Part shown: in pieces, positions 47,710 to 64,000 of the stretch
Position numbering within the stretch: position 1 is the first letter of the stretch
How the letters are laid out: every line of letters begins with the position of its first letter
Source: Anolis carolinensis
Lineage: Eukaryota
Assembly (NCBI RefSeq): GCF_035594765.1
Contig: NC_085846.1
Location: 12,201,190 to 12,265,189, forward strand
DNA: 64,000 bases
Direction: 5' to 3'
Notes under the pieces: generated by a model
The model's input: only the letters and a program-made list of their open reading frames with translations
Databases searched by the model: none
What the model was told of the DNA's origin: nothing
Made by a program: the position numbers and the translations under genes

Positions 47710-50700
47710 AAAGACTTTTCTCCATGGGTGGAATTCCCCTTGGCTGCTGGAGAAAGCTTTTAATTACCTACATCCAGGCCCAGTTCTGCAAGAATTATGC
47801 CCTATGGATTCCTACCAATGCCCCGTGATGGCCCGGTGAAGCGCTCCTTTCCTCTTGGACTCCTGAATGCTGTGATAAAGGATTTGGGGGCTCGTGTTCC
47901 TGTGCAATTGCTGGTAGATGCAGCATCCTCCTGGTTATTCCAGTCCTTCCTATGGGCATGCTTTATGCTTTAATGACTTGTCTCTTGAAGCCAGATTCCT
48001 GTGAGAGCCTGTGGACAACTTTTCAAGGCTCTCCTTGGAGAAGTGTGAAGTTACAAAATAGCACTAGGGCAGAATAAAGTCGCTTTTTCGCTGCCCTCCT
48101 CCCGTTCACTGCCAACTGCATTTTCATTCTCCTGCTGAGGTTGTGATTGTTTTTCAAAGACATTGGGTGAAGGGAAACCTTTTACTCTCGCATGTGCACA
48201 TCCTGTTTGGATTTCTCAGGCTGTTCTCAATCTGAAAGTAAAAAAAAATTACATAGTAGCATGTGGCACCAAAAAAAACTCTTCCTTTCATCTTACAACG
48301 TAAGTCTCAGCCAAGGACATCTCTTATTGCTACATCTACATGTTGGGCCTTCAACAAATAAAGACATTTCAAGTGGCAGGCAGCAGCCAAATGTCCTCCT
48401 CTTGAGAGGAAAAGACTATACGATAACCTTGAGTGTTCATATTCCGTTGCTCTGGGGTGGGTTCCAGAACATTCTTCTTTCCTACACAATGATGTGTTTT
48501 ATTTCCACACAATCTGTTCTTTCTGTTGCCATTCATTGTTTTTTAAACAAATAAAACATGTTACTCTGGGGAGCGGGATGATGGGTTCCTCTCTGCCCTT
48601 TCCCCTCCCTATTCAGCATTAGAGGGAAGGGGGTACAGAAATAATTCTCTTTTTTGCTGTGATACTCCAATAAAAAGTGCAGATTCCAAAATCTACCAAG
48701 CGTTGTCTACTTTTCAGAGGAAATTATAGTAAGGTGATGATAACCAATGAAAAAAATAGCTATGTATGGGTCAGAATTTGACCAAAGAGGACCTTTTTAA
48801 CCAGCTAAATCTTGTATTAGAGATTTTCTTGTTAATGTCCGTAGTATCACGAAAGATACTCAGTTTGTTAAACCTGACTCTGACATAAGTATAAAGGCAG
48901 GCAATAACTGATACATTACTACAAACCTTGGCACGTGCCTTTTCTCTTGTACTTCATCTAAAACGGAAGATATTGAAATGAGAGTTGTACAATATAATGG
49001 AGACACTTTGGTGTTGTAATAAAAAGGTCTTTTTAACTCTATATCTCACATGACACAGTTCTATAAGTTAAGATCTGTGTTGGTTTTCTAAAGTTATATT
49101 GGTAGTTTTACTCAGTTTTAGGAAAGTCTATTCTCAGATTATCCTTCATACTTAGAATGATCCAGTGAGGGGATCAAGTGTTGAGGTAAATAGATTTATT
49201 TGGAAATCACCGTATTGATAAGGAACCAGACATAGAGGTGCTTCAGTTCTTGGTGAAGTATTTCCTGAAATAAACATTTTGGATAAAATTAAGGAAATGC
49301 TGACAGTATGCCTATCTCAAGGAAGTAAAACTAATGGTCAAAAGCCCTGTGTCAGAAAAGCGTGAGGGAATAATGGCGCATTTAGATATCACTGTGCTTG
49401 AACCCACAAACAGTGTGGAAATAAGGAAAATACAAGGAAGAATTGAACTGGCATGGTTGAGATTCTAGATCAGCTACTTAATTATTCAGAGTTCATCTTT
49501 CATTTCTTGATGCCTGGTAAATCAAGATTGGGGGACTTTTAGGATGCCTATGTATTCCCTACGCTATTGAATATATATAGACTATGAATACAAATTAATC
49601 ATGAATGTGCAGCTCTAGGCTGGGCATTGTAACTGCAAGTTTCGGCATTCCTGTTAGACCCAGGATTATTCTTACAACTTTCCTGCATTGAATGCCTTCT
49701 ACAAATCGCTGTATGAAAACAAAACAATGGTCAGAATCAACTGAAAAGCTGCTATATGATGGAAGCGCTTAGGTTCAGGCAAACTATCAGGAAGGCAAAG
49801 TACCTTAAATACTAAAGATAACCATTTGAATACTTTTAAAAAGAATGTTATTTGGCCAGAATCGAACATCCCCTCAGGAGAAGGTTAAATTGCCTCTGTG
49901 TCTGTCTCTGTCTATGTGTATATGGGCATTGAATGTTTGCCCTATATGTATATAATGAGATCCGCCCTGAGTCCCCTTTGGGGTGAGAAGGGTGGAATAT
50001 AAATACTGTAAATAAACAAATATTATGCAATTTCTGCATGCCCTCCCAAACACAAAAATGATTTGAGCAGAACAACTTCAGTCTTAATTCTGGAATTGAA
50101 TAGCTCAACATTACGAAAATAGAAGTTATGAAATTCTTGTTATGGCTGCTGAAAAGCAAAACCGAAAGTCGAAACCTATCTGGCCTCATGATATTAGTGA
50201 CTGAAGTGTAAACAGAGACCAATTTCCAGAAAATAGTTTGCTGTCTCTCTAATTCTTTTCCTGGCTATGACTGAGTTCTCATGGGTTCATATGTATGCAG
50301 TGAATCATACACTGGCGGGGTTTGGGGGAGAGATTGACCCAGCATGACTGTAGTTGTAGTTCATCCACATCCTTACGCATTTTCTAATGGGCCCATTCAT
50401 AAAATCCAAAAACAATTACGTTTATTTCGGGAGCTCTATGCAGATTAATTATCACTCTAAGATGCAGCAGCTACAACGGGGGGATGTAGAAAGGGATTTT
50501 GTTGAGAAACCCAAGAATGGCGTTGGAGGGAGTGTGTCACTTTGAATTTGAACTATTTTGATTTTTTTTTATCTAGCCAATAATAACTACTTTTGAAGAC
50601 TAACAGGTTTTATTTGGCATGAGATTTTGCAGACTGCAACCCACTTCCTGAGATGCAAGCAGCAGACAGATATTTATGCACAAGTCTGAAGTGGGAGGAT

Positions 50701-54335: not shown

Positions 54336-54498
54336 TGTTGATTACAGCCAATATTTGGGGGTATTCCAGAAAATGGAATATCATTACAGTGAGGAATTTA
54401 ATGTAGTGTGATGCCTTCTATTTAATAAAAGGTTCTCGGCTACTAATCAATATTAATTCAGTGATCTTTGTTCCTGGGATTGTGAATATTGCAATGTA

Positions 54499-54580
54499 CA
54501 GTAGAGTCTCACTTATCCAACATAAACGGGCTGGCAGAACATTGGATAAGCAAAGAAGTTGGATAAGGGAGACTCTACTG
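54499..54580. mobile_element. Minimal internally deleted copy of the same MITE
   Basis: Both TIRs within 82 bp; TA flanks. Confidence 0.75.
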
Positions 54581-54792
54581 TATTTATTGATTTCAGTGCC
54601 TGCTGTGTCCCAGTTTTACACACCATATTTCATAATAAGACACAATGTCACCACTCTTGGTAAACAGTTGAGAAAGGTACAAAACCATGTTTAATGGAAA
54701 AGGGCAAAAAAAATGATACAGACAGTTGTGAGGCAAATGAAGAGACTCAAAAGGGATGAAAATAATAACACACATTTTAAACCTTTCTGCAG

Positions 54793-56810
54793 GGAGAAGT
54801 GAGGCACTTGAGGATATTCTCTCTGAATTAAAATTGTTGAAACAAAAAAGCAAGAACATGACACTGCAAGAAACCCTTGAAATCAGTTCTGGAAGTTTAA
54901 AGCATTGTTCTCCACATAGCCTAGAAGAGCTTCCTTGGCATTTTCTGCGGAAAGTCCTGGCTTTGAATGTGAGCGCCCGGAACACAAACCTTGACCAGGG
55001 GACAGCTGGTGGAGAAGGTGTGAGAGGAATGGATAAAGAAAAGACAATTGATGATAGAGTATTCAATATTACTGAGAGGGATATAGATTTGTCTATGAAC
55101 CCCCTTGATGTCCTTTGTGCTCTTCTGCTTTGTTCGGATAGTTTCCTTCAGCAAGATATCCTCTCCAAAATGTCCCTGTGCCAGTTTGCCCTGCCTTTGC
55201 TTCTGCCACCCTTAGAGACTTCCAAATGCACCCTGATGATTTGGGCCATGAGAGACATTGTGAAGAAATGGAGGCCCCATTCGCTGGCTGGAAGCAGAGG
55301 CTTTAGGGAAGAGAACCTGGTATTGATTCCCATGCCAATAATATCCTTGTCAAGCTATAGATTAAATGATTTTGAAGTAAATGATGACCATTTGCAGTTA
55401 CCCTGGTTGAAATATCTAAGTTTTAATTTAGAGGCTCGTAAGATGAGGATACAAGAAATATCTCTCTCACTGATATACAAGTACATTTCATATATGGATG
55501 AAAAAATCAGTTCCAAAAGAGATTATGTTTCAACATACTGTGGAGAACTTCTCAGTTTCATTAATCAGAACCTTCAAGAGGATGATGTTAAAAAACTTAA
55601 TACGACATCTGCCTTTGAAGTGGACCTGAAGCTTCACATTTTAGGAGAATCAGCTTACAAATTCCAGCAGATGCATAAAGATTTCATTGAAGAAAATGAT
55701 CACCAGAAAAGACTGGAGCAACTGAAACCTCATTATTTTTCCATTTTCAAAGATCTTTATCAGAAAAAAGATGCCCAGCAAATCAGAGCCAAAGGCTTCT
55801 GTGACAGGTGTCTCCATCCTGCCTTAGAAGAGCACATCAACAAAAGACTTGGGATAGAAATAATAGATCAATTTCGTAACAGTGAACGTTCAATGGAATG
55901 TTCTGGTCGGAACTTCTTTCAGTTTACACTCTTGAAGGAGCTGTTGGATAAATGGAATTTTGACCAGTATGTAGAATCCATCACAAACTATGAACAGTTT
56001 GTCAAGAACTGGATCCAGAAACGAGTGATAGATTCCTATATCAAAAATGAGAATTTGAAGAACTTGGAAAAAGACATTCTTTCAGGAGTAATAGCAAAAG
56101 TTAAGAATGCACTGGACATCCTAAGAAATAAAGAGATTGAAACATTCTCTAATTTTGTGGACAATATTAGTCTGGAACTGCAAAAAGCCTTGGCCATATC
56201 TAAGAGTAAACTAGTAGGATTAGAGTTGAGGAGTGCATTTGATCCTAGCAACTTCTCTGCTTATGTTGAGAACTATCTTCAAGATTTGCAGAAAGAGATA
56301 CTCTCCACATTTGAATCATTAGATATTGAATCCAAGCTCTCAAGATTGTCTGTGAAACCCCAGGATGAGATCTTCAAGCAAGTGTTTGGCTGCGGGAAGC
56401 AGTGTCCCTTCTGCAAGGTCCCCTGTGAAGCCGGCGGTGCTGCCCACAAGGAGCATTTTGCAGCTGTCCATCGCCCTAAAGGATTAGGAACATACAGATA
56501 TGATACCACAAAAAAGCTTGTTATTGATATATGTTCTTCTTCTGTAGCCTCCCAAGTCTCTTTCAGATGTCCAGAAACCAATTGGGAATGGCATCCGTAT
56601 AAAGATTATCGTAAGATTTTTCCTGACTGGTGCATCCAACCTGATCCCAGTCTCAATGCTTCTGATTACTGGAAGTTTGTTTTAAAAGAGTTCAATAATG
56701 AGTTTTCCAAAAAGTATGAATGTAAACCAGCAGATTTGCCTAAAGACTGGAAACAGATAACAAAAGAACAGGCTCTCCAAGCCTTGAAGGAATCTTATAA
56801 CATGAAATAG
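54793..56810 (+). CDS. VLIG/URGCP-like paralogue with in-frame internal deletion of the GTPase region (terminal exon; candidate upstream exons 51421..51483, 52481..52543, 53211..53348); could be a young pseudogene
   Basis: The N-part matches gene 1 up to MPTIS (NPLDVLCALLLCSDSFLQQ, IVKKWRPHSLA). It then jumps to the equivalent of gene 1 ORF residue ~1091 onward (DYVSTYCGELL, LKPHYFSIFKDLY, GCGKQCPFCKVPC, ASDYWKF). No G1 or G3 motif. Acceptor cag|GG at 54793; AATAAA at 56832. Confidence 0.8.
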
Positions 56811-57935
56811 ACAGCTCTCTTCTGAGTAAACAATAAATATCTGAGGTTTGAATTATAGAGAATTGTTTCAATCAAAGGCTTCTGTTTTTGAAATTTCTCT
56901 TTTGTACATAATTTCTTTAAAAAATATGATAGGGTATCTGGATCCCTGGAAGAATGGAAGGTATGCATATCATAAGCTTTTCCAGCTGCACATTAGCTTT
57001 ACAGTATTAGGAATATATTGAGAAAGTGGAAAACCATATCCATGATGTTTTTCCCACTAACTTCCATGACCAGAGCCAGAAATCATGCCACAAATTGGGA
57101 ACTCCATCTATACAACAGTTATTGCGACCATCATTTCCATTGAAAGATCCACTCAGATCCCAATATCAATTATTTTGTTTAGTAGAAACTGATTCCATCA
57201 TAATTTTGCCAAGAAAGGCTGAAACAAAAATGTTAATCCCTTTTCTGTTTTCCTTTCCTAATGTTGTTATATTTATTTATACCACGCTTTATCTTTCCCA
57301 AAGGAAACTCAAAGCGGCTTAATATAAAAACATCAACATACAACAATTTCAAATATACAAATATGCAAACATTAAAACAGAATTAAATATAAACAGTATT
57401 AAAACATACCTAGTTAAAAACCGCTAAATCATGCTATGAGTTAAAAACCACAGTGTTCCTCTGTCAAAACTGGAAAAATGTAAGCAGACACACATAAAAC
57501 CCTGAAGTATTTGACATCTTGAAAGAAACCAGAATATGAAAAGAAATTACTTTCTCCAGTAACTAGCAAAAAATTAGAAGGCAATGTTATAATAATAATA
57601 ATAATTTTATTTTTGTACCCCGCCACCATCTCCCCAGAGAGACTCGGGGCGGCTTACAGATATAAAACCAACATACAATAATATCAAATACAAAAACACA
57701 CAAATAAATTTAAAAAGCATTAAAAATCACAGTCATTATAAAACATTTGAGAAACACAGCAATAAAAACATAAAATGAGCTGGGCAAAGTGCACTGAGTG
57801 GAACTTGTAAACAAGAAGGAAGTTAAGGTGCTACAAAGTCATGGGAAGAGCTTTAGACTGGGGTGAACACTGAAGCTATGTCAAGGAGTTAACCAAGAGG
57901 TACAACTGGTCAGAAGAACCCGTTAGTACCAGGGT

Positions 57936-60900
57936 TTAATATACAGTGGGCGGAACTTCTTCAAAGGCCTGTTTGAAGAGCCAGGTTTTCAGGCTCTTCC
58001 TGAACACTTCCAAGGTGGCAGCTTGCCTAATTTCCCTGGGGAGCGCGTTCCAGAGCCGGGGGGCCGCCACGGAGAAGGCCCTCTCCCTCGTCCCCACCAA
58101 CCGCACTTGTGACGGAGGCGGAAGCGAGAGGAGGGCCTCCCCCGATGAGCGAAGAGATCGTGCGGGTTCGTAGGGGGAGATGCGGTCAGAAAGGTAAGTG
58201 GGTCCCAAACCGTTCAGGGCTTTGTAGGTCAGGACCTGCACCTTGAATTGGGTCCGGAAGGTGAACGGCAGCCAGTGGAGCTCCTTGAACAGGGGAGTAG
58301 ACCGCTCCCTGTAATTCACTCCTGTTAGGAACCTGGCTGCCGCCCGCTGAACTAGTTGGAGTTTCCGGGCCGTCTTCACAGGCAGCCCCACGTAGAGTGC
58401 GTTGCAATAATCCAATCTAGAGGTAACTAAGGCATGGACCACCGTAGCCAGATCAGACTTCACGAGGTATGGTCGCAGCTGGCGCACAAGTTTTAGTTGT
58501 GCAAAGGCCCTCCCGGCCACCGCCAGCACCTGAGCCTCAAGTGTCAGAGATGAGTCCGGGAGGACCCCCAAGCTGCGGACCTGCGCCTTCAGGGGGAGTG
58601 CGACCCCGTCAAGCACAGGTTGCCACCCAATACCCCGATCAGACACACGACTGACCTGGAGGACCTCTGTCTTGTCAGGATTAAGTTTCAGCTTGTTCGC
58701 CCTCATCCAGCCCATCACAGCCGCCAAGCACTGGTCCAGAATTCGAGGGGCTTCCTTGGAGTTTGGTGGAAAAGAGTAGTAGAGTTGGGTGTCATCTGCG
58801 TAGAGATGGCACCACACTCCAAAACTCCGGATGACCTCTCCCAGCGGTTTCATGTAGATGTTAAAAAGCATGGGGGACAGAATGGAACCTTGCAGGACCC
58901 CACAGGTCAATGGCCAGGGGTCCGAGCAGGTGTCCCCCAGCTTCACCAACTGGGATCGGCCCTCCAGGAAGGACTGGAGCCACTGCAGAGCAGAACCCCC
59001 AAGGCCCATCCCGGAGAGCCGTCCCAGAAGGATACCATGGTCGATGATATCGAAAGCCGCTGAGATGTCCAAGAGAACCAGCAGGGTCACACTCCCCCTG
59101 TCCAGCTCCCTGCGGAGGTCATCCACCAAGGTGACCAAAGCCGTCTCGGTACTGTGCCCAGGTCTAAAGCCGGACTGTGATGGATCCAGAAAATCAGTGT
59201 CATCCAAGAATCCCAGGAGCTGAGAGGCAACCACCCGCTCCAGGACCTTGCCCAAAAAAGGAAGATTCGAGATTGGTCTGTAGTTATTTAGGATGGTCGA
59301 ATCAAGGGAGGCTTTCTTCAAAATTGGCCTCACTATAGCCTGTTTTAGGGCAGATGGAAATTTGCCTTGATCCAGAGAGGCATTAATGATACTCACAAAC
59401 CAATCTCCCAATCCTCCTCTGGCCGATTTTATAAGCCAAGAAGGGCAAGGATCCTTGGCACAAGTGGTCGCCCTCACAGCTCCAAGGATCTTGTCCACGT
59501 CATCCAGGTGAACAAGCTGAAACGAATCCTACAAGATAGGACAGACAGGTGCCTCGGTTAACTCACATGGCATTGCATCCAAGCTAGCATCCAAGTCATG
59601 ACGGATCTGAGCGACTTTGTCTGCAAAATGGTGCACGAATTCGCTGCACCGAGTTGCCGCGTCCTCGGGTGCCTCCCCACCCTCAGAAGAGTGGAGGAGC
59701 TCCCCGACGACACGGAACAACTCCGATGATCTATTAGTTGCAGACGCTATGCGGGCAGTCGTGAAGGTCTTCCTGGCTGCCCGCAAAGCCGCGGAGTAGG
59801 TACAAATAGCAGCACTAGCCCGTGCTCGGTCAGAGGCGTCCTGAGTCTTCCGCCAGCGGCACTCTAGTCCTCTTCTCTTGTGCTTCATCACTGCCAACTC
59901 CTCTGAGAACCAGGGAGCTGAAGTAACTCTGCGCAAAGAGAGGGGACATTCGGGGGCAATCGTGTCAATTGCTCTAGACATCTCGCTATTATAGCGATCT
60001 ACCAGGGCATCAACAGGATTGTCAGCACCCAAGACAGGAGAATCCCCAAGAGATCTCAGGAATCCATCAGGATCCATCAGTCTCCTGGGGCGGACCATCT
60101 TAATGGGTCCCCCACCCCTGCGGAGGTTTTTTGGGGACACAGTGAGTTTTAGACTGATCAGGTGATGGTCGGACCATGACAATGGAAGAATGTTTTTCTC
60201 TTCCACTCCAACCTCACCATCCATCGCAACAAAAACCAGGTCGAGTGTGTGACCAGCTTGATGGGTGGGACCAGATATCACTTGGGACAGCCCCATGGTC
60301 GTCATGGCAACCATGAAATCCAGAGCAGCACCTGTCAAGGTGGACTCGGCATGGATGTTAAAGTCTCCCAGCACTACCAGTCGCTGGGAGACCAACGCCA
60401 CACCAGAGATCACCTCTGCTAGCTCAGGCAGGGAAACTGCAGTGTCGCGGGGTGGTTGGTACACTAGCAGAATCCCCAGACTGTCCCGGGCACCCACCCT
60501 AAGATGTACACACTCAAAACCTGTAGATTGCGGGACGGCACACCTGACCAGGGAGATGGACTGCCGAAAAACCACCGCGACCCCGCCTCCCCTTCCCCCA
60601 GATCTGGCCTGCTGTTGCACCCCAAAACCCAGAGGACAGAGCTGGGTGAGATTTACCCCACCCAGCTCATCCAACCAGGTCTCAGTGATGCAAGCCAGGT
60701 TCGCCACTTCATCCAAGATAAGATCCTGGATGATAGCTGATTTACCATTGACGGACCTGGCATTGAACAGCAGGATCCTCAATCCAAGGGGACCGTCATG
60801 GGTGCTACCACACTTAACCTTTTCCAGGGTCGCAAGAACTCTGTTGCGCTTCTCCCTGGGATGACAGTAACCACTCCTCCTCCTCCCCCACACAACCTCA

Positions 60901-60977
60901 ATGGTACCCCCCGGCTCCGGTCCACCCCCCACCGCTTGGGCAACAGGCAGAATGGAGATGGAATTGGGTGGCCCTAG
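57936..60977 (-). pseudogene. LINE ORF2 (APE endonuclease + reverse transcriptase) with one in-frame TAG at 59529-59531
   Basis: EN motifs LFNARSV, CITETW, LGDFNIH, GHTLDLVF, WSDHH. RT motifs QSGFRPGHSTETAL, LDISAAFD, QGSILSP, YADD. The two listed ORFs (59529..60932 and 57936..59498) share a frame: ...CCT ATC TTG TAG GAT TCG TTT CAG... Confidence 0.9.
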
Positions 60978-61997
60978 TCAGCTCTCCGCTGCCAGGGAGC
61001 TACTCGGGATTTTATCATAGGTATGGTCTAAGAATGTATCATGCACGGACAGAGGGAGGGAGCAGTCAGGAGAACTGAACAAAAGCAATGTCTGTGGGCA
61101 GGACTCGGAAATAGATTGAGAAGGGACTGGGGTTGAACTGGGGAATACTAAACAATTTCTTGGAGGGGATGGAGACCTAACTCGATGATTACGGGCACTA
61201 TCCATTTTGGATCTGGTGGTTATATGAGGAGGCAGTTCGAAGCCTGCCATCAGAGGCCGAATTATGGGATTGAAAAACACCTTCCTGATACTAATTTCCC
61301 ATAAGTTTAATAAAGGTTTACGTGCCCAAAGCTCTTCAATTAATGAACTATCCTCGAAGGTGACAACGAAGCATGTAGAGCGGTCCCGAGCTTGAAAGTC
61401 CCTGCGTAGCCAGGAGATGGTCTTAATTCTGACTACATTTGGGCTCGTAGAAAGTATCTGAGTCAGGGACTTCTGAACAGCTCTCTTAGAGGTCCATCTA
61501 CCCCTATTTAAACATGAGTCTACTATTTCAAACGCCAACATATTTGATTGAGGTAGATATTCATGGTGGCATGCTGGATCCAGTATACAATGGACAGACT
61601 CAGATATTCCCTCGATAATTGTCTTTTGTGTACTCCAGTCCATTTTCCTATACCCAACCCTTCCTTCTCCCCCTTGAAGATGTGAAAGCTCTCTCTCATC
61701 TTCGCCGTCCTCGGCTTCTTTCACAAGCTCCTTTTTACATTCTGATGGCCTTTCCCTTTCCTCCCTATTGAAGATCAGTGACCAATTGTCCACGGTTTGG
61801 TTAACAGTCGCTGGATCCTCTTCTTTCCAGGCGTTAAAACATCCAGGATTTCTCACCATAAGAGATATACCTTTGAAGAGGTGATCTATTTTCTCGTTTA
61901 ATATTGCCAGTTGTGATAGCACAAGATGAAATGACTTCCTCATAAGTTCACACAAGTGCGACAGTTCACCATTCCCATGAGTTTCAAGTTGACTCAT
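60978..61997 (-). CDS. LINE ORF1 protein (339 aa)
   Basis: ATG-initiated ORF directly upstream of the endonuclease frame. N-terminal heptad-like segment (LSQLAILNEKIDHL), acidic linker, possible RRM-like region (CFVVTFEDSSLIEELW), Ser/Pro-rich tail. Domain calls are inferred. Confidence 0.75.
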   Translation of the reverse strand: MSQLETHGNGELSHLCELMRKSFHLVLSQLAILNEKIDHLFKGISLMVRNPGCFNAWKEEDPATVNQTVDNWSLIFNREERERPSECKKELVKEAEDGEDERELSHLQGGEGRVGYRKMDWSTQKTIIEGISESVHCILDPACHHEYLPQSNMLAFEIVDSCLNRGRWTSKRAVQKSLTQILSTSPNVVRIKTISWLRRDFQARDRSTCFVVTFEDSSLIEELWARKPLLNLWEISIRKVFFNPIIRPLMAGFELPPHITTRSKMDSARNHRVRSPSPPRNCLVFPSSTPVPSQSISESCPQTLLLFSSPDCSLPLSVHDTFLDHTYDKIPSSSLAAES

Positions 61998-63169
61998 TTC
62001 CTATACACTTTCCAAAACCTTTCAAACAGTAACCACTCAAGACCTTCAATACTATTTCACCCTTCTCCCTAGCCTTCTCAGCCCTTCTCTAACCTTCTCA
62101 ACCTACCCTCCAGTGTAACCTAAAATTACACTATTCTCTACCCTAACCATCAATCAAAACCTGCAATACATGCTCAGACCCTCGATCACTTTCCAAATCC
62201 AACAAAAACCAGAATCCAATAACTCAGAGAAGTTGAACTACCACAATTCCCTTTCCCTATCCAGGCTCGCCACCTTCAGTCTATCCTTCTGCACTGCACT
62301 AAAGAAACCAAAACAATAAAAACCCAGTCATAGAACACACAAAATTAAAATCAATAAAATAAAAACAGATGGACAAACAACAGACACAACTTAAAAAAAA
62401 ATTGTTGATGAATCATAGACCCAACTTCATTTAAAGAAATACATTTCCGCCCCAAACTCCAACAGACCAAAATCTGAACTGAATTAGGGTCCTGAATATA
62501 TTCTAATACAGAAGGTGTCAGGTCATATGGCATTGAACACAAGCTAAGAACTATTGAGCTGATATTTCTGAGTAGATATTTGAATTATTTTCCCAGTCTA
62601 GACATCAAAACTGACCTTCCTCAGACTATTTCTAGGTTCCTTGCTATTGGAAGGCTTTCATATGCTGGCTGTAATTCTAGCTGTGTCAGCCAATAGCTTA
62701 TCTAACCTTTCTGATGTGGATAATTCATTAACACCTTCTCTTGTCTACAACAACATTGTTTTTACTAATGATCATGAAGTGAAATAAATAATCATAATAT
62801 TGAACATAAAAGAAATGCTAATATTAAAAACGTTGTTTTGTTGAATTTTGTCTATATCATCATACCAATATATATACATAAATAAATCATAAAAATAGGG
62901 AAATATAAAAAAGAAAAACATTTTAATTACATTGACGTATCATTTGAAAAAAGAGGAAAATGCATACCTACTATATTGGGCTGTCACAGTAATGAATTAT
63001 TACACTCTGTGTTTTTGGTCTTTGATTTCTCAAAATCTGTCAAGTGTCTTAATAAAAATATTTTCTTTGCTTATTCATGTTCAATAAACACTAACCATGT
63101 TTTTAGTCATAATAAAGGATGTGGAAAAAGTCTCTCAGATGTGTGAGATTAACAACATCTTGTGATATC

Positions 63170-63649: not shown

Positions 63650-64000
63650 GAATGTGTAGCTCTAGGTTAGGCATTGTAACTGCGATTGTGAATTTTGAAC
63701 ATCACCTGCAAGTTTCTGTATTCCTTTTAGACCCAGGATTATTCTTAGAACTTTCCTGCATTGAACGTCTTCCAAAAACCGCTGTATGAAAACAAAACAA
63801 TGGTCAGAAACAGCTGAAAACTGCTATATGATGGAAGCACTTAGGTTCAGGAAAACTACCAGGAAGACAAATACTTTTAAAAAGAATGACAACTGAACAT
63901 TCAGAATGAATATTTTTTAAAAGAATGCTATCTTTAATATCATGTGGTTTCTGCATGCCCTCCCAGCATAAAAATGATTTGGGCAGAACAACCTCAATCT
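63650..64000 (+). repeat. Segmental duplicate of ~49603-50083 (upstream region of the second VLIG gene)
   Basis: Long shared runs such as AGACCCAGGATTATTCTTA, CGCTGTATGAAAACAAAACAATGGTCAGAA and TTTCTGCATGCCCTCCCA. Confidence 0.85.

What the first reader, a model, noticed from the sequence alone, without database searches (positions are those of the whole stretch)
60919..60990. L2 LINE whose ORF1 and ORF2 are one reading frame joined by UGA-CUAG plus a 3' stem-loop: candidate programmed stop-codon readthrough
Seen: on the - strand ORF1 ends ...GCA GCG GAG AGC TGA (60980-60978) and continues in frame CTA GGG CCA CCC AAT TCC ATC TCC ATT CTG CCT GTT GCC CAA GCG GTG GGG... straight into the endonuclease ORF (61997 minus 60932 = 1065 = 355 codons). 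The listed ORF2 start at 60932 is GTG; the first true AUG lies deep inside the APE domain, after the NARS, ETW and GDFN motifs. GGCCACCC (60973-60966) can pair with GGGUGG-A-CC (60927-60919), with further inner pairing, giving a hairpin that starts ~4 nt after the stop. Established: UGA-CUA(G) is among the leakiest stop contexts (alphavirus nsP3/nsP4; vertebrate LDHB, MDH1, AQP4), and 3' stem-loops stimulate readthrough. The bicistronic LINEs I know make ORF2 by termination-reinitiation or coupling. Inference: this family makes abundant ORF1p plus a rare ~1350-aa ORF1-EN-RT fusion, a gag-pol-like strategy I do not know to be described for LINEs.
Basis: partly seen in the sequence, partly recalled or inferred. 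Interest (0 to 1): 0.88.

Follow-up and report, generated by a model that had tools for sequence, protein, structure and literature searches.

The report
Lizard LINE with leaky in-frame stop
A lizard jumping gene (an L2-type LINE) has its two genes in one reading frame, split only by a stop codon in the leakiest context known in vertebrates. The arrangement is shared with anole relatives, so the enzyme is plausibly made as a rare gag-pol-like fusion, which sequence alone cannot prove.

Summary
The sequence facts hold. On the minus strand, ORF1 (61997-60981, 339 aa) ends AGC TGA (60980-60978). CTA GGG follows and runs in frame into an endonuclease/reverse-transcriptase ORF. That ORF has no in-frame ATG for 222 codons.

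The stop is a family feature, not a private nonsense mutation:
- An Anolis carolinensis relative whose ORF1 is only about 41% identical keeps the same 12 nt, GAGCTGACTAGG, in the same frame.
- Five further ORF1 homologues end at the same place.
- Two other anole LINE lineages with this ORF1 type also have ORF1-TGA-C-ORF2 in one frame. One of them is fully intact.

Two points weaken the finding:
- The proposed hairpin folds no better than shuffled sequence and is not conserved.
- This copy is dead, because it carries a second, private in-frame stop (TAG, 59531-59529).

Programmed UGA-CUAG readthrough giving an ORF1-EN-RT fusion is my best reading (about 0.5). AUG-independent reinitiation or non-AUG initiation is the main rival (about 0.35). 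Sibling copies in the same genome could not be fetched. Two other first-reader notes of this scan report the same junction on other pieces of this genome. I found no paper describing this for vertebrate LINEs.

The parts
57589..62300 (-). Near-full-length L2-type LINE. The 5' limit is approximate.
   Evidence: ORF1 plus EN plus RT lie in one frame. The 3' UTR ends in an (ATT)n tail. No second copy is in the window.
60981..61997 (-). ORF1, 339 aa: N-terminal long helix, RRM-like domain, disordered tail.
   Evidence: Searches give the ORF. The AlphaFold model has a helix at 9-49, an RRM-like fold at 150-245 (pLDDT about 90) and a disordered tail at 251-339. The Foldseek top hits are all RRMs, including human L1 ORF1p 2w7a, though none reaches E below 0.001. 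No Pfam family matches.
60978..60980 (-). ORF1 stop codon, TGA.
   Evidence: Conserved in Anolis L001. ORF1 homologues end at the same aligned position.
60974..60977 (-). CTAG directly after the stop, completing the UGA-CUAG readthrough context.
   Evidence: The motif's activity is reported in PMC4132726.
60973..60984 (-). 12-nt island GAGCTGACTAGG, identical between the window and Anolis L001.
   Evidence: Alignment A2. The flanks are about 50-56% identical.
60783..60977 (-). Linker of about 65 codons between the stop and the EN domain. It is open only in the ORF1 frame and has no ATG in that frame.
   Evidence: the other two frames contain stops. Omega is 0.48 for codons 1-25, which is not decisive.
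60825..60827 (-). Conserved in-frame CTG (codon 51) in a good Kozak context; a candidate non-AUG start for the rival reading.
   Evidence: GCGACC CTG G in both the window and L001.
60930..60932 (-). GTG (codon 16), the mechanical 'ORF2 start' in the ORF list.
   Evidence: It is not conserved at this codon in L001.
60225..60767 (-). Apurinic-type endonuclease domain.
   Evidence: Pfam PF03372, E 4.6e-13. Omega is 0.12 against Anolis L001.
60312..60314 (-). First in-frame ATG after the ORF1 stop (codon 222), inside the EN domain.
   Evidence: The position is the same in L001.
59529..59531 (-). Private in-frame TAG in ORF2, which inactivates this copy.
   Evidence: Relatives L001, L002 and L004 carry sense codons here.
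58656..59315 (-). Reverse transcriptase domain.
   Evidence: Pfam PF00078, E 6.4e-34.
57936..57938 (-). ORF2 stop codon.
60919..60973 (-).
   Evidence: z is +0.79 (86 nt) and 0.01 (63 nt). The arms are not conserved in L001, and only 3 pairs fall in shared columns.

Best explanation
This is a young but dead copy of an ORF1-bearing L2-type LINE. Its family keeps ORF1 (a coiled-coil plus RRM RNA-binding protein) and the endonuclease/reverse-transcriptase ORF in one reading frame. The two are separated only by UGA in the context UGA-CUAG, and ORF2 has no AUG of its own before the endonuclease catalytic residues.

In intact copies most ribosomes would stop and make ORF1p. A few percent would read the UGA as a sense codon and make an ORF1-linker-EN-RT fusion, a gag/gag-pol-like ratio set by the stop context alone. 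No downstream hairpin is needed.

Shown: the anatomy, its conservation in anole relatives, and the same layout in two other LINE lineages that carry this ORF1 type.

Inferred: that readthrough happens in lizard cells, that it is the route to functional ORF2 protein, and that the fusion joins the ORF1p/RNA particle through the ORF1 coiled coil.
For: - Junction and frame: TGA CTA GGG runs in frame into EN and RT.
- Conservation at the DNA level: Anolis carolinensis L001 has ...GGG AGC TGA CTA GGC... in frame with EN. Twelve nt are identical there, while ORF1 is 41% identical in protein and the next 25 codons are 56% identical in DNA.
- Conservation at the protein level: ORF1 homologues P0002, P0064, P0065 and P0003 are 236-356 aa. 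They end on Ser at the position aligned with the window's ...AES.
- No ORF2 start: neither the window nor L001 has an in-frame ATG for 222 codons. The nearest ATGs (+181, +217, +268, +310) are out of frame.
- Open frame: only the ORF1 frame is open across the linker.
- No indel between the window and L001 across 222 codons.
- L009, an intact Anolis LINE of another clade (RT 23% identical) with a homologous ORF1, is one 1637-codon frame. Its only internal stop is TGA-CTG. EN starts 24 codons later and the first in-frame ATG is 123 codons later.
- L005, a third lineage, has TGA CAA CTA (the CARYYA readthrough motif) in frame with EN.
- Internal control: the other stop in this copy (TAG, 59531-59529) is private, since relatives have sense codons there.
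- Published activity: UGA-CUAG gives 3.5-31% readthrough in HEK-293T with 12 nt of 3' sequence. CARYYA gives about 15% in the same reporter (PMC4132726).
- The ORF1 tail is predicted disordered, so it would serve as a flexible tether in a fusion.
Against: - No experiment, ribosome footprint or peptide supports readthrough.
- Junction DNA was obtained for only one true relative (L001), and that copy is itself degenerate.
- Sibling copies from the window's own genome could not be fetched.
- Conservation of CTAG between two sequences has a chance probability of about 0.1 on its own. For the full 12-mer it is about 1e-3.
- The linker's omega of 0.48 over 25 codons does not prove it is translated.
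- Known LINEs make ORF2p by termination-reinitiation (PMC5972666). From memory, human L1 does not even need the ORF2 AUG.
- ORF1-less L2 relatives in Hemicordylus and Rhineura start ORF2 at their own ATG, so EN-RT works without a fused ORF1.
- L009 has only UGA-C, not the full CUAG.
- Agreement of frame across three lineages is weak statistics: about 0.04-0.1, and L005 and L009 are related to each other.
Confidence: 0.5

Rival explanations
1. ORF2 is made as a separate protein by AUG-independent termination-reinitiation, or by non-AUG initiation. A candidate start is the conserved CUG at codon 51 (60827-60825), or the GUG at 60932. The shared frame and the UGA-C context are tolerated or incidental. 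Some fusion may be made by leak, but it is not the functional product.
For: - Termination-reinitiation is the documented route in LINE-1 and SART1 (PMC5972666).
- A CTG in a strong Kozak context is conserved in both the window and L001, 17 codons before the EN domain.
- ORF1-less L2 relatives make a free-standing ORF2p whose N-terminus lies near this region.
- The linker shows only weak protein-level constraint.
Against: - This reading gives no reason for the same frame in all four elements examined, across linker-length changes.
- It gives no reason for UGA-C in all of them, or for the full CUAG / CARYYA motifs.
- It does not explain the 12-nt invariant island at the stop.
- A start at CUG-51 would drop the conserved basic I-x-V-x-G-R-R-R segment that ORF1-less relatives keep inside ORF2.
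- Scanning ribosomes would meet four out-of-frame AUGs before any in-frame one.
Confidence: 0.35
2. Readthrough is driven by a 3' stem-loop. The structure, not just the CUAG context, is the stimulatory element.
For: - The minimum-energy fold does pair the C-rich segment after CUAG with G-rich sequence downstream.
- 121-nt windows fold slightly better than shuffles in both the window and L001 (z -1.49 and -1.48).
Against:
- The two minimum-energy folds share only 3 pairs in the same columns.
- The arms are not conserved.
- The stem would begin about 4 nt after the stop. From general knowledge, that is closer than the roughly 8-nt spacer of known stimulators.
- L009 and L005 show no stable structure downstream (z +0.21 and -0.88).
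- UGA-CUAG needs no structure.
Confidence: 0.07
3. The stop is a decay artefact in a single-ORF element, or the whole arrangement belongs to a dead lineage and has no function.
For: This copy is dead (TAG at 59531-59529). L001 and L005 are also degenerate copies.
Against: - ORF1 homologues from at least five other copies or families stop at the same place.
- The stop and its context are identical in L001.
- L009 is fully intact and has the same layout.
- The window copy has only one disabling change in about 1353 codons, which points to recent activity.
Confidence: 0.05

Closest known systems
Vertebrate UGA-CUAG programmed readthrough (OPRL1, OPRK1, MAPK10, AQP4, MDH1; alphavirus nsP3/nsP4) - Loughran et al. 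2014, PMC4132726
   Same: The stop context is identical, UGA followed by CUAG. Anolis L001 even has CUAGGC, as in OPRL1 and Ross River virus. A conserved in-frame downstream ORF is present, and no RNA structure is required.
   Different: Here the extension is not a short C-terminal tail. It is a polypeptide of about 1000 aa carrying endonuclease and reverse transcriptase, inside a transposon. Activity has not been tested in any lizard system.
Retroviral gag-pol by stop-codon readthrough (murine leukaemia virus type) and the gag-UGA-pol junction of the Candida LTR element Tca2
   Same: An abundant RNA-binding structural protein is made alongside a rare fusion that carries the polymerase. The ratio is set at a leaky in-frame stop (Tca2 is mentioned in PMC3956500).
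   Different: This is a non-LTR element with no protease to release the enzyme. The stop is UGA-CUAG rather than UAG plus a pseudoknot. No supported downstream structure was found.
LINE ORF2 translation by termination-reinitiation (human LINE-1; silkworm SART1 UAAUG coupling) - reviewed in PMC5972666
   Same: A bicistronic LINE RNA in which ORF2 must be made at a low level after ORF1.
   Different: There is no stop-start overlap and no ORF2 AUG near the junction. The two ORFs are in the same frame, with a readthrough-type stop context.
ORF1-less L2 elements (zebrafish ZfL2-2 / UnaL2 type; here Hemicordylus L002 and Rhineura L011)
   Same: ORF2 is homologous, 57-70% identical in EN and RT. They share the G-rich N-terminus and the I-S-x-V-x-G-R-G-R motif.
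   Different: They have their own ATG (M-C-L-G-E...) preceded by a tandem-repeat 5' UTR, with no ORF1 and no upstream stop. The window's family has ORF1 joined in frame at about that point.
Arabidopsis ATLN LINEs (Noma et al. 2000, DNA Res 7:291). Recalled from memory; the paper was not readable here.
   Same: As I recall, orf1 and orf2 are in frame and separated by one amber codon, and suppression was proposed.
   Different: Those are plant L1-clade elements with UAG rather than UGA-CUAG. My recollection is unverified.

Membership tests
L2-clade LINE (CR1 group) | ORF2 with an N-terminal apurinic-type endonuclease followed by a reverse transcriptase | tested here: met
   PF03372 at E 4.6e-13 and PF00078 at E 6.4e-34.
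L2-clade LINE (CR1 group) | 3' end with a short microsatellite tail rather than poly(A) | tested here: met
   The 3' UTR ends in (ATT)n at about 57606-57589.
L2-clade LINE (CR1 group) | RT groups with reference L2 elements in a phylogeny | not tested
No reference L2, CR1 or Rex1 sequences were available in the tools. The closest proteins are unnamed squamate and coelacanth LINE ORF2s.
L2-clade LINE (CR1 group) | ORF1, if present, is of the esterase type (per the 2026 survey PMC13343379) | tested here: not met
   ORF1 here is a coiled coil plus an RRM-like domain, with no Pfam hit. The survey states that lepidosaur L2s lack ORF1. This argues for a new ORF1 variant rather than against L2 membership.
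Programmed stop-codon readthrough, UGA-CUAG class | UGA immediately followed by CUAG | tested here: met
   60980-60974.
Programmed stop-codon readthrough, UGA-CUAG class | The motif is conserved across relatives | tested here: met
   Identical in Anolis L001 within a 12-nt island. ORF1 homologues end at the same position. There is only one DNA comparison, so support is thin.
Programmed stop-codon readthrough, UGA-CUAG class | The downstream frame is open, in frame and under protein-coding constraint | tested here: met
   The frame is open into EN and RT. EN omega is 0.12. The first 25 codons give omega 0.48, which is inconclusive.
Programmed stop-codon readthrough, UGA-CUAG class | The readthrough product has been observed | not testable with these tools
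   Needs a reporter assay, ribosome profiling or mass spectrometry.
Structure-stimulated readthrough (3' stem-loop or pseudoknot) | A downstream structure more stable than chance and conserved | tested here: not met
   z is +0.79, 0.01 and -0.37. Only 3 pairs are shared between the window and L001.
LINE termination-reinitiation (SART1 / LINE-1 type) | An ORF2 start codon overlapping or close to the ORF1 stop | tested here: not met
   There is no in-frame ATG for 222 codons, and the nearest ATGs are out of frame. AUG-independent reinitiation cannot be excluded.
2A / StopGo recoding in non-LTR elements | A D-x-E-x-N-P-G-P motif at the junction | tested here: not met
   The linker translation has no N-P-G-P.
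Selenocysteine recoding of UGA | A SECIS element in the transcript | tested here: not met
   An Rfam scan of 57500-62400 at E up to 1 found only a chance microRNA-like match.

The most novel reading that the evidence does not exclude
A group of lizard LINEs from at least two RT clades shares a coiled-coil/RRM ORF1 module. These elements make their endonuclease/reverse transcriptase only as an ORF1-ORF2 fusion, through programmed readthrough of a UGA-C stop. In the L2-type family the context is the full UGA-CUAG. That would be a gag/gag-pol strategy in non-LTR retrotransposons. The ORF1 module may have been grafted in frame onto the old ORF2 start, with S-stop-L-G replacing M-C-L-G.
Probability: 0.4. 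Interest if true: 0.8.

Novelty: new variant of a known kind. Interest (0 to 1): 0.62.

Why it matters
How LINEs make a little ORF2 protein next to a lot of ORF1 protein is only partly understood. The known answers are reinitiation, IRES-like entry and 2A skipping.

A vertebrate LINE family that sets the ratio with a leaky stop would add a fourth, retrovirus-like answer. It would be directly testable with a 40-nt reporter cassette. It would also give a natural ORF1-ORF2 fusion for studying how the enzyme is recruited to its own RNA (cis preference).

The same data show that anole-type L2 elements carry an RRM-type ORF1. A 2026 survey of CR1-group elements did not record one for lepidosaurs.

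Tried and rejected
**Same-family copies**
- No other copy is in the window (blastn of the element against the window).
- The ORF1 protein searches gave only 3, 13 and 4 hits. Every ORF1 homologue whose source is given is from Anolis carolinensis.
- The window's own genome is not in the protein collection.
- The search of earlier findings by sequence came back blank.

**Contig look-ups that did not reach a junction**
- L003, L004, L007 and L008 are 5'-truncated.
- L002, L006, L010 and L011 have no ORF1.
- P0038 is not on record.

**Hairpin**
- Tested in five windows and in three other elements. Nothing is beyond chance.

**Other recoding mechanisms**
- Selenocysteine (no SECIS) and 2A skipping (no NPGP motif) are rejected.

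**Private nonsense mutation**
- Rejected.

**Homology of the junction to the M-C-L-G start of ORF1-less L2s**
- 13 of 19 nt match Hemicordylus, but three matches of that quality occur within the 4.7-kb element. Anolis L001 does not reach 12 of 19. I keep this only as an idea.

**Literature**
- Ten full-text searches found no paper tying LINE ORF2 expression to UGA-CUAG or to readthrough in vertebrates.
- Novick et al. 2009, Alisch et al. 2006 and Noma et al. 2000 are not held, so prior description in those papers or in Repbase cannot be excluded.

- No contig looked human.
Full report
**What is there**

On the minus strand, from about 62300 to 57589, lies one near-full-length LINE. ORF1 runs 61997-60981 (339 aa, ATG start) and ends ...GCA GCG GAG AGC TGA at 60980-60978. 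The next bases are CTA GGG CCA CCC.

The same frame then continues through an apurinic-type endonuclease (Pfam PF03372, E 4.6e-13) and a reverse transcriptase (PF00078, E 6.4e-34). It ends at the stop at 57938-57936. A 3' UTR follows and ends in an (ATT)n tail. No second copy is in the window.

The listed ORF2 'start' at 60932 is a GTG. The first in-frame ATG is 222 codons after the stop (60314-60312), beyond the NARS, TETW and GDFN endonuclease motifs.

Three relatives carry sense codons at that position, so this TAG is a private nonsense mutation and this particular copy is dead. It is the only disabling change in about 1353 codons, so the copy is young.

**Is the ORF1 stop a family feature?**

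Same-genome siblings could not be fetched, because the genome is not in the searchable collections. Relatives could be.

The ORF1 protein has few homologues. Every homologue whose source is named comes from Anolis carolinensis. They are 28-41% identical to the window's ORF1. They are 236-356 aa long. Four of them end on Ser at the position aligned with the window's ...AES (P0002, P0064, P0065, P0003). Independent copies from diverged families therefore stop at the same place.

One of these homologues (P0001) has DNA on record, locus L001. It is a decayed copy, but its junction reads ...GGG AGC TGA CTA GGC CCT..., in frame with the endonuclease. In the pairwise alignment the 12 nt GAGCTGACTAGG are identical. 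The ORF1 tail upstream is roughly half identical, and the 25 codons downstream are 56% identical.

Both elements lack any in-frame ATG up to the same codon 222. Both share four out-of-frame ATGs before it. Neither shows an indel over those 222 codons.

The private-nonsense reading is therefore rejected. The contrast with the truly private TAG at 59531-59529 serves as an internal control.

**The same layout in other LINE lineages**

Two more anole loci carry a distant homologue of this ORF1 (27-31% identical) in front of a different ORF2. The RT of L009 is only 23% identical to the window's.

- L009 is intact. It is a single 1637-codon frame whose only internal stop is TGA, followed by CTG. The EN domain begins 24 codons later, and the first in-frame ATG is 123 codons later, inside EN.
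- L005 is decayed. It reads ...ACA TCT TGA CAA CTA... in frame with EN. CAACUA fits the CARYYA readthrough motif.

So all four elements examined, from three lineages, have the same layout. ORF1 and ORF2 share a frame, the stop is UGA followed by C, and no AUG precedes the endonuclease. This holds even though linker lengths differ between lineages.

**ORF1-less relatives**

The ORF2 N-terminal piece finds L2-type ORF2s across squamates and in coelacanth. Full-length copies from Hemicordylus (L002) and Rhineura (L011) have no ORF1. A tandem-repeat 5' UTR leads straight to an ATG and the N-terminus M-C-L-G-E. This lies 13-16 codons before a conserved I-S-x-V-x-G-R-G-R-Y-G motif, which the window also has (I-E-V-V-W-G-R-R-R).

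EN-RT therefore works as a free protein in relatives. The window's family has lost that ATG and has ORF1 joined in frame at roughly that point.

The junction S-stop-L-G resembles M-C-L-G. The nucleotide match (13 of 19) is not rare enough to rely on, so I keep this only as an idea.

**The hairpin**

Dinucleotide shuffles average -34.0, giving z +0.79. The results elsewhere are similar:

| Region folded | z-score |
|---|---|
| Window, 86 nt (60985-60900) | +0.79 |
| Window, 63-nt core | 0.01 |
| Anolis L001 equivalent, 86 nt | -0.37 |
| Window, 121 nt | -1.49 |
| Anolis L001, 121 nt | -1.48 |
| L009 downstream | +0.21 |
| L005 downstream | -0.88 |

The two 121-nt folds share only three pairs in the same columns. 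The region is simply C-rich and then G-rich. A structure is not supported.

A structure is also not needed. Loughran et al. 2014 found that UGA-CUAG gives 3.5-31% readthrough in HEK-293T cells, with 12 nt downstream being sufficient (PMC4132726).

**ORF1 protein**

With the seven-sequence alignment, AlphaFold gives four regions:
- a long N-terminal helix (residues 9-49);
- a disordered stretch (54-146);
- a confident alpha/beta domain (150-245, pLDDT about 90);
- a disordered tail (251-339).

The Foldseek top hits are all RRMs, including the human LINE-1 ORF1p RRM (2w7a). None reaches E below 0.001. Pfam finds nothing.

This is an L1-like coiled-coil-plus-RRM architecture, not the esterase type reported for L2 and CR1. 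A 2026 survey states that lepidosaur L2s lack ORF1 (PMC13343379).

**Mechanism**

An intact RNA of this family would carry UGA-CUAG followed by an open, in-frame ORF of about 1000 codons. Established reporter data therefore predict a percent-level ORF1-EN-RT fusion. The disordered ORF1 tail and the Gly/Pro-rich linker would tether the enzyme. The ORF1 helix could bring the fusion into ORF1p multimers on the same RNA. Both of these points are inference.

Several features fit selection for readthrough:
- the shared frame across lineages;
- UGA-C in every case, and CUAG or CARYYA in two lineages;
- the invariant island at the stop;
- the missing AUG.

The main rival is AUG-independent termination-reinitiation, or initiation at a near-cognate codon. 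A CTG in a strong context (60827-60825) is conserved in the window and L001. Reinitiation is the documented LINE mechanism (PMC5972666). The first 25 linker codons show only weak constraint (omega 0.48).

Sequence alone cannot decide between these. I put readthrough as the functional route at about 0.5, reinitiation or non-AUG initiation at about 0.35, a structure-dependent version at under 0.1, and no function at about 0.05.

**Comparison with what is known, and novelty**

The stop context matches the vertebrate UGA-CUAG class exactly. The logic matches retroviral gag-pol readthrough. The element is an L2-type LINE by domain order, by its 3' tail and by its nearest relatives. I could not run an RT phylogeny against reference L2 sequences.

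Ten full-text searches found no paper linking LINE ORF2 expression to UGA-CUAG or to readthrough in vertebrates. A Candida review only raises stop bypass as an open question for Zorro3 (PMC3956500).

I recall that Noma et al. 2000 proposed amber suppression between in-frame ORFs of Arabidopsis LINEs, but that paper could not be read. Novick et al. 2009 on anole LINEs could not be read either. Prior description is therefore possible.

I rate the finding a new variant of a known kind.

**Earlier notes of this scan**

Two other first-reader notes (s1-535981 and s1-558061) report the same TGA-CTA(G) in-frame junction in L2 copies on other pieces of this genome. They are unchecked, but they fit a family-wide feature.

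No contig looked human.

Noticed in passing
window 59529-59531 (-): A private TAG nonsense codon lies between the EN and RT parts of ORF2. Relatives carry sense codons at this position. It is the only disabling change in about 1353 codons, so this is a recently inserted but dead copy.
   Followed up: yes
L009:6001-10914 (+), Anolis carolinensis CM069369.1: An intact LINE of a different RT clade: a single 1637-codon frame with one internal TGA (followed by CTG) between a 481-aa ORF1 and an AUG-less EN-RT. Its ORF1 (P0070) is annotated in NCBI as 'ras-GEF domain-containing family member 1A isoform X4', which looks like a misannotation of a transposon gene sitting inside that locus.
   Followed up: partly
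L005:9063-9071 (+), Anolis carolinensis CM069367.1: A third LINE lineage with a homologous ORF1 ends in TGA CAA CTA, which fits the CARYYA readthrough motif. It is in frame with its endonuclease. The copy is decayed.
   Followed up: partly
L002:3900-5010 and L011:4300-5035: ORF1-less L2 elements of Hemicordylus and Rhineura have tandem-repeat 5' UTRs, and ORF2 starts M-C-L-G-E. The window's junction S-stop-L-G-P may derive from that start, but the similarity is weak (13 of 19 nt).
   Followed up: partly
window 60981-61997 (-): ORF1 has a coiled coil plus an RRM-like domain and no Pfam family. A 2026 survey (PMC13343379) reports only esterase-type ORF1s in L2/CR1 and no ORF1 at all in lepidosaur L2s, so this ORF1 type seems not to be catalogued there.
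   Followed up: partly
window 54756-56810 (+): A 684-aa ORF with a URGCP / VLIG-like domain (PF25496, E 6.9e-37). Another note of this scan (s1-552499) flags it as a GTPase-less VLIG paralogue.
   Followed up: no
window 50019-50084 and 63936-64000: Two adjacent direct-repeat pairs, 85-87% identical and 13.9 kb apart. The second runs off the end of the window. They may be two copies of a dispersed repeat or a local duplication.
   Followed up: no
window 54497-54582: An inverted repeat with 25-nt arms, 96% complementary, and a 36-nt loop, just upstream of the VLIG-like ORF.
   Followed up: no
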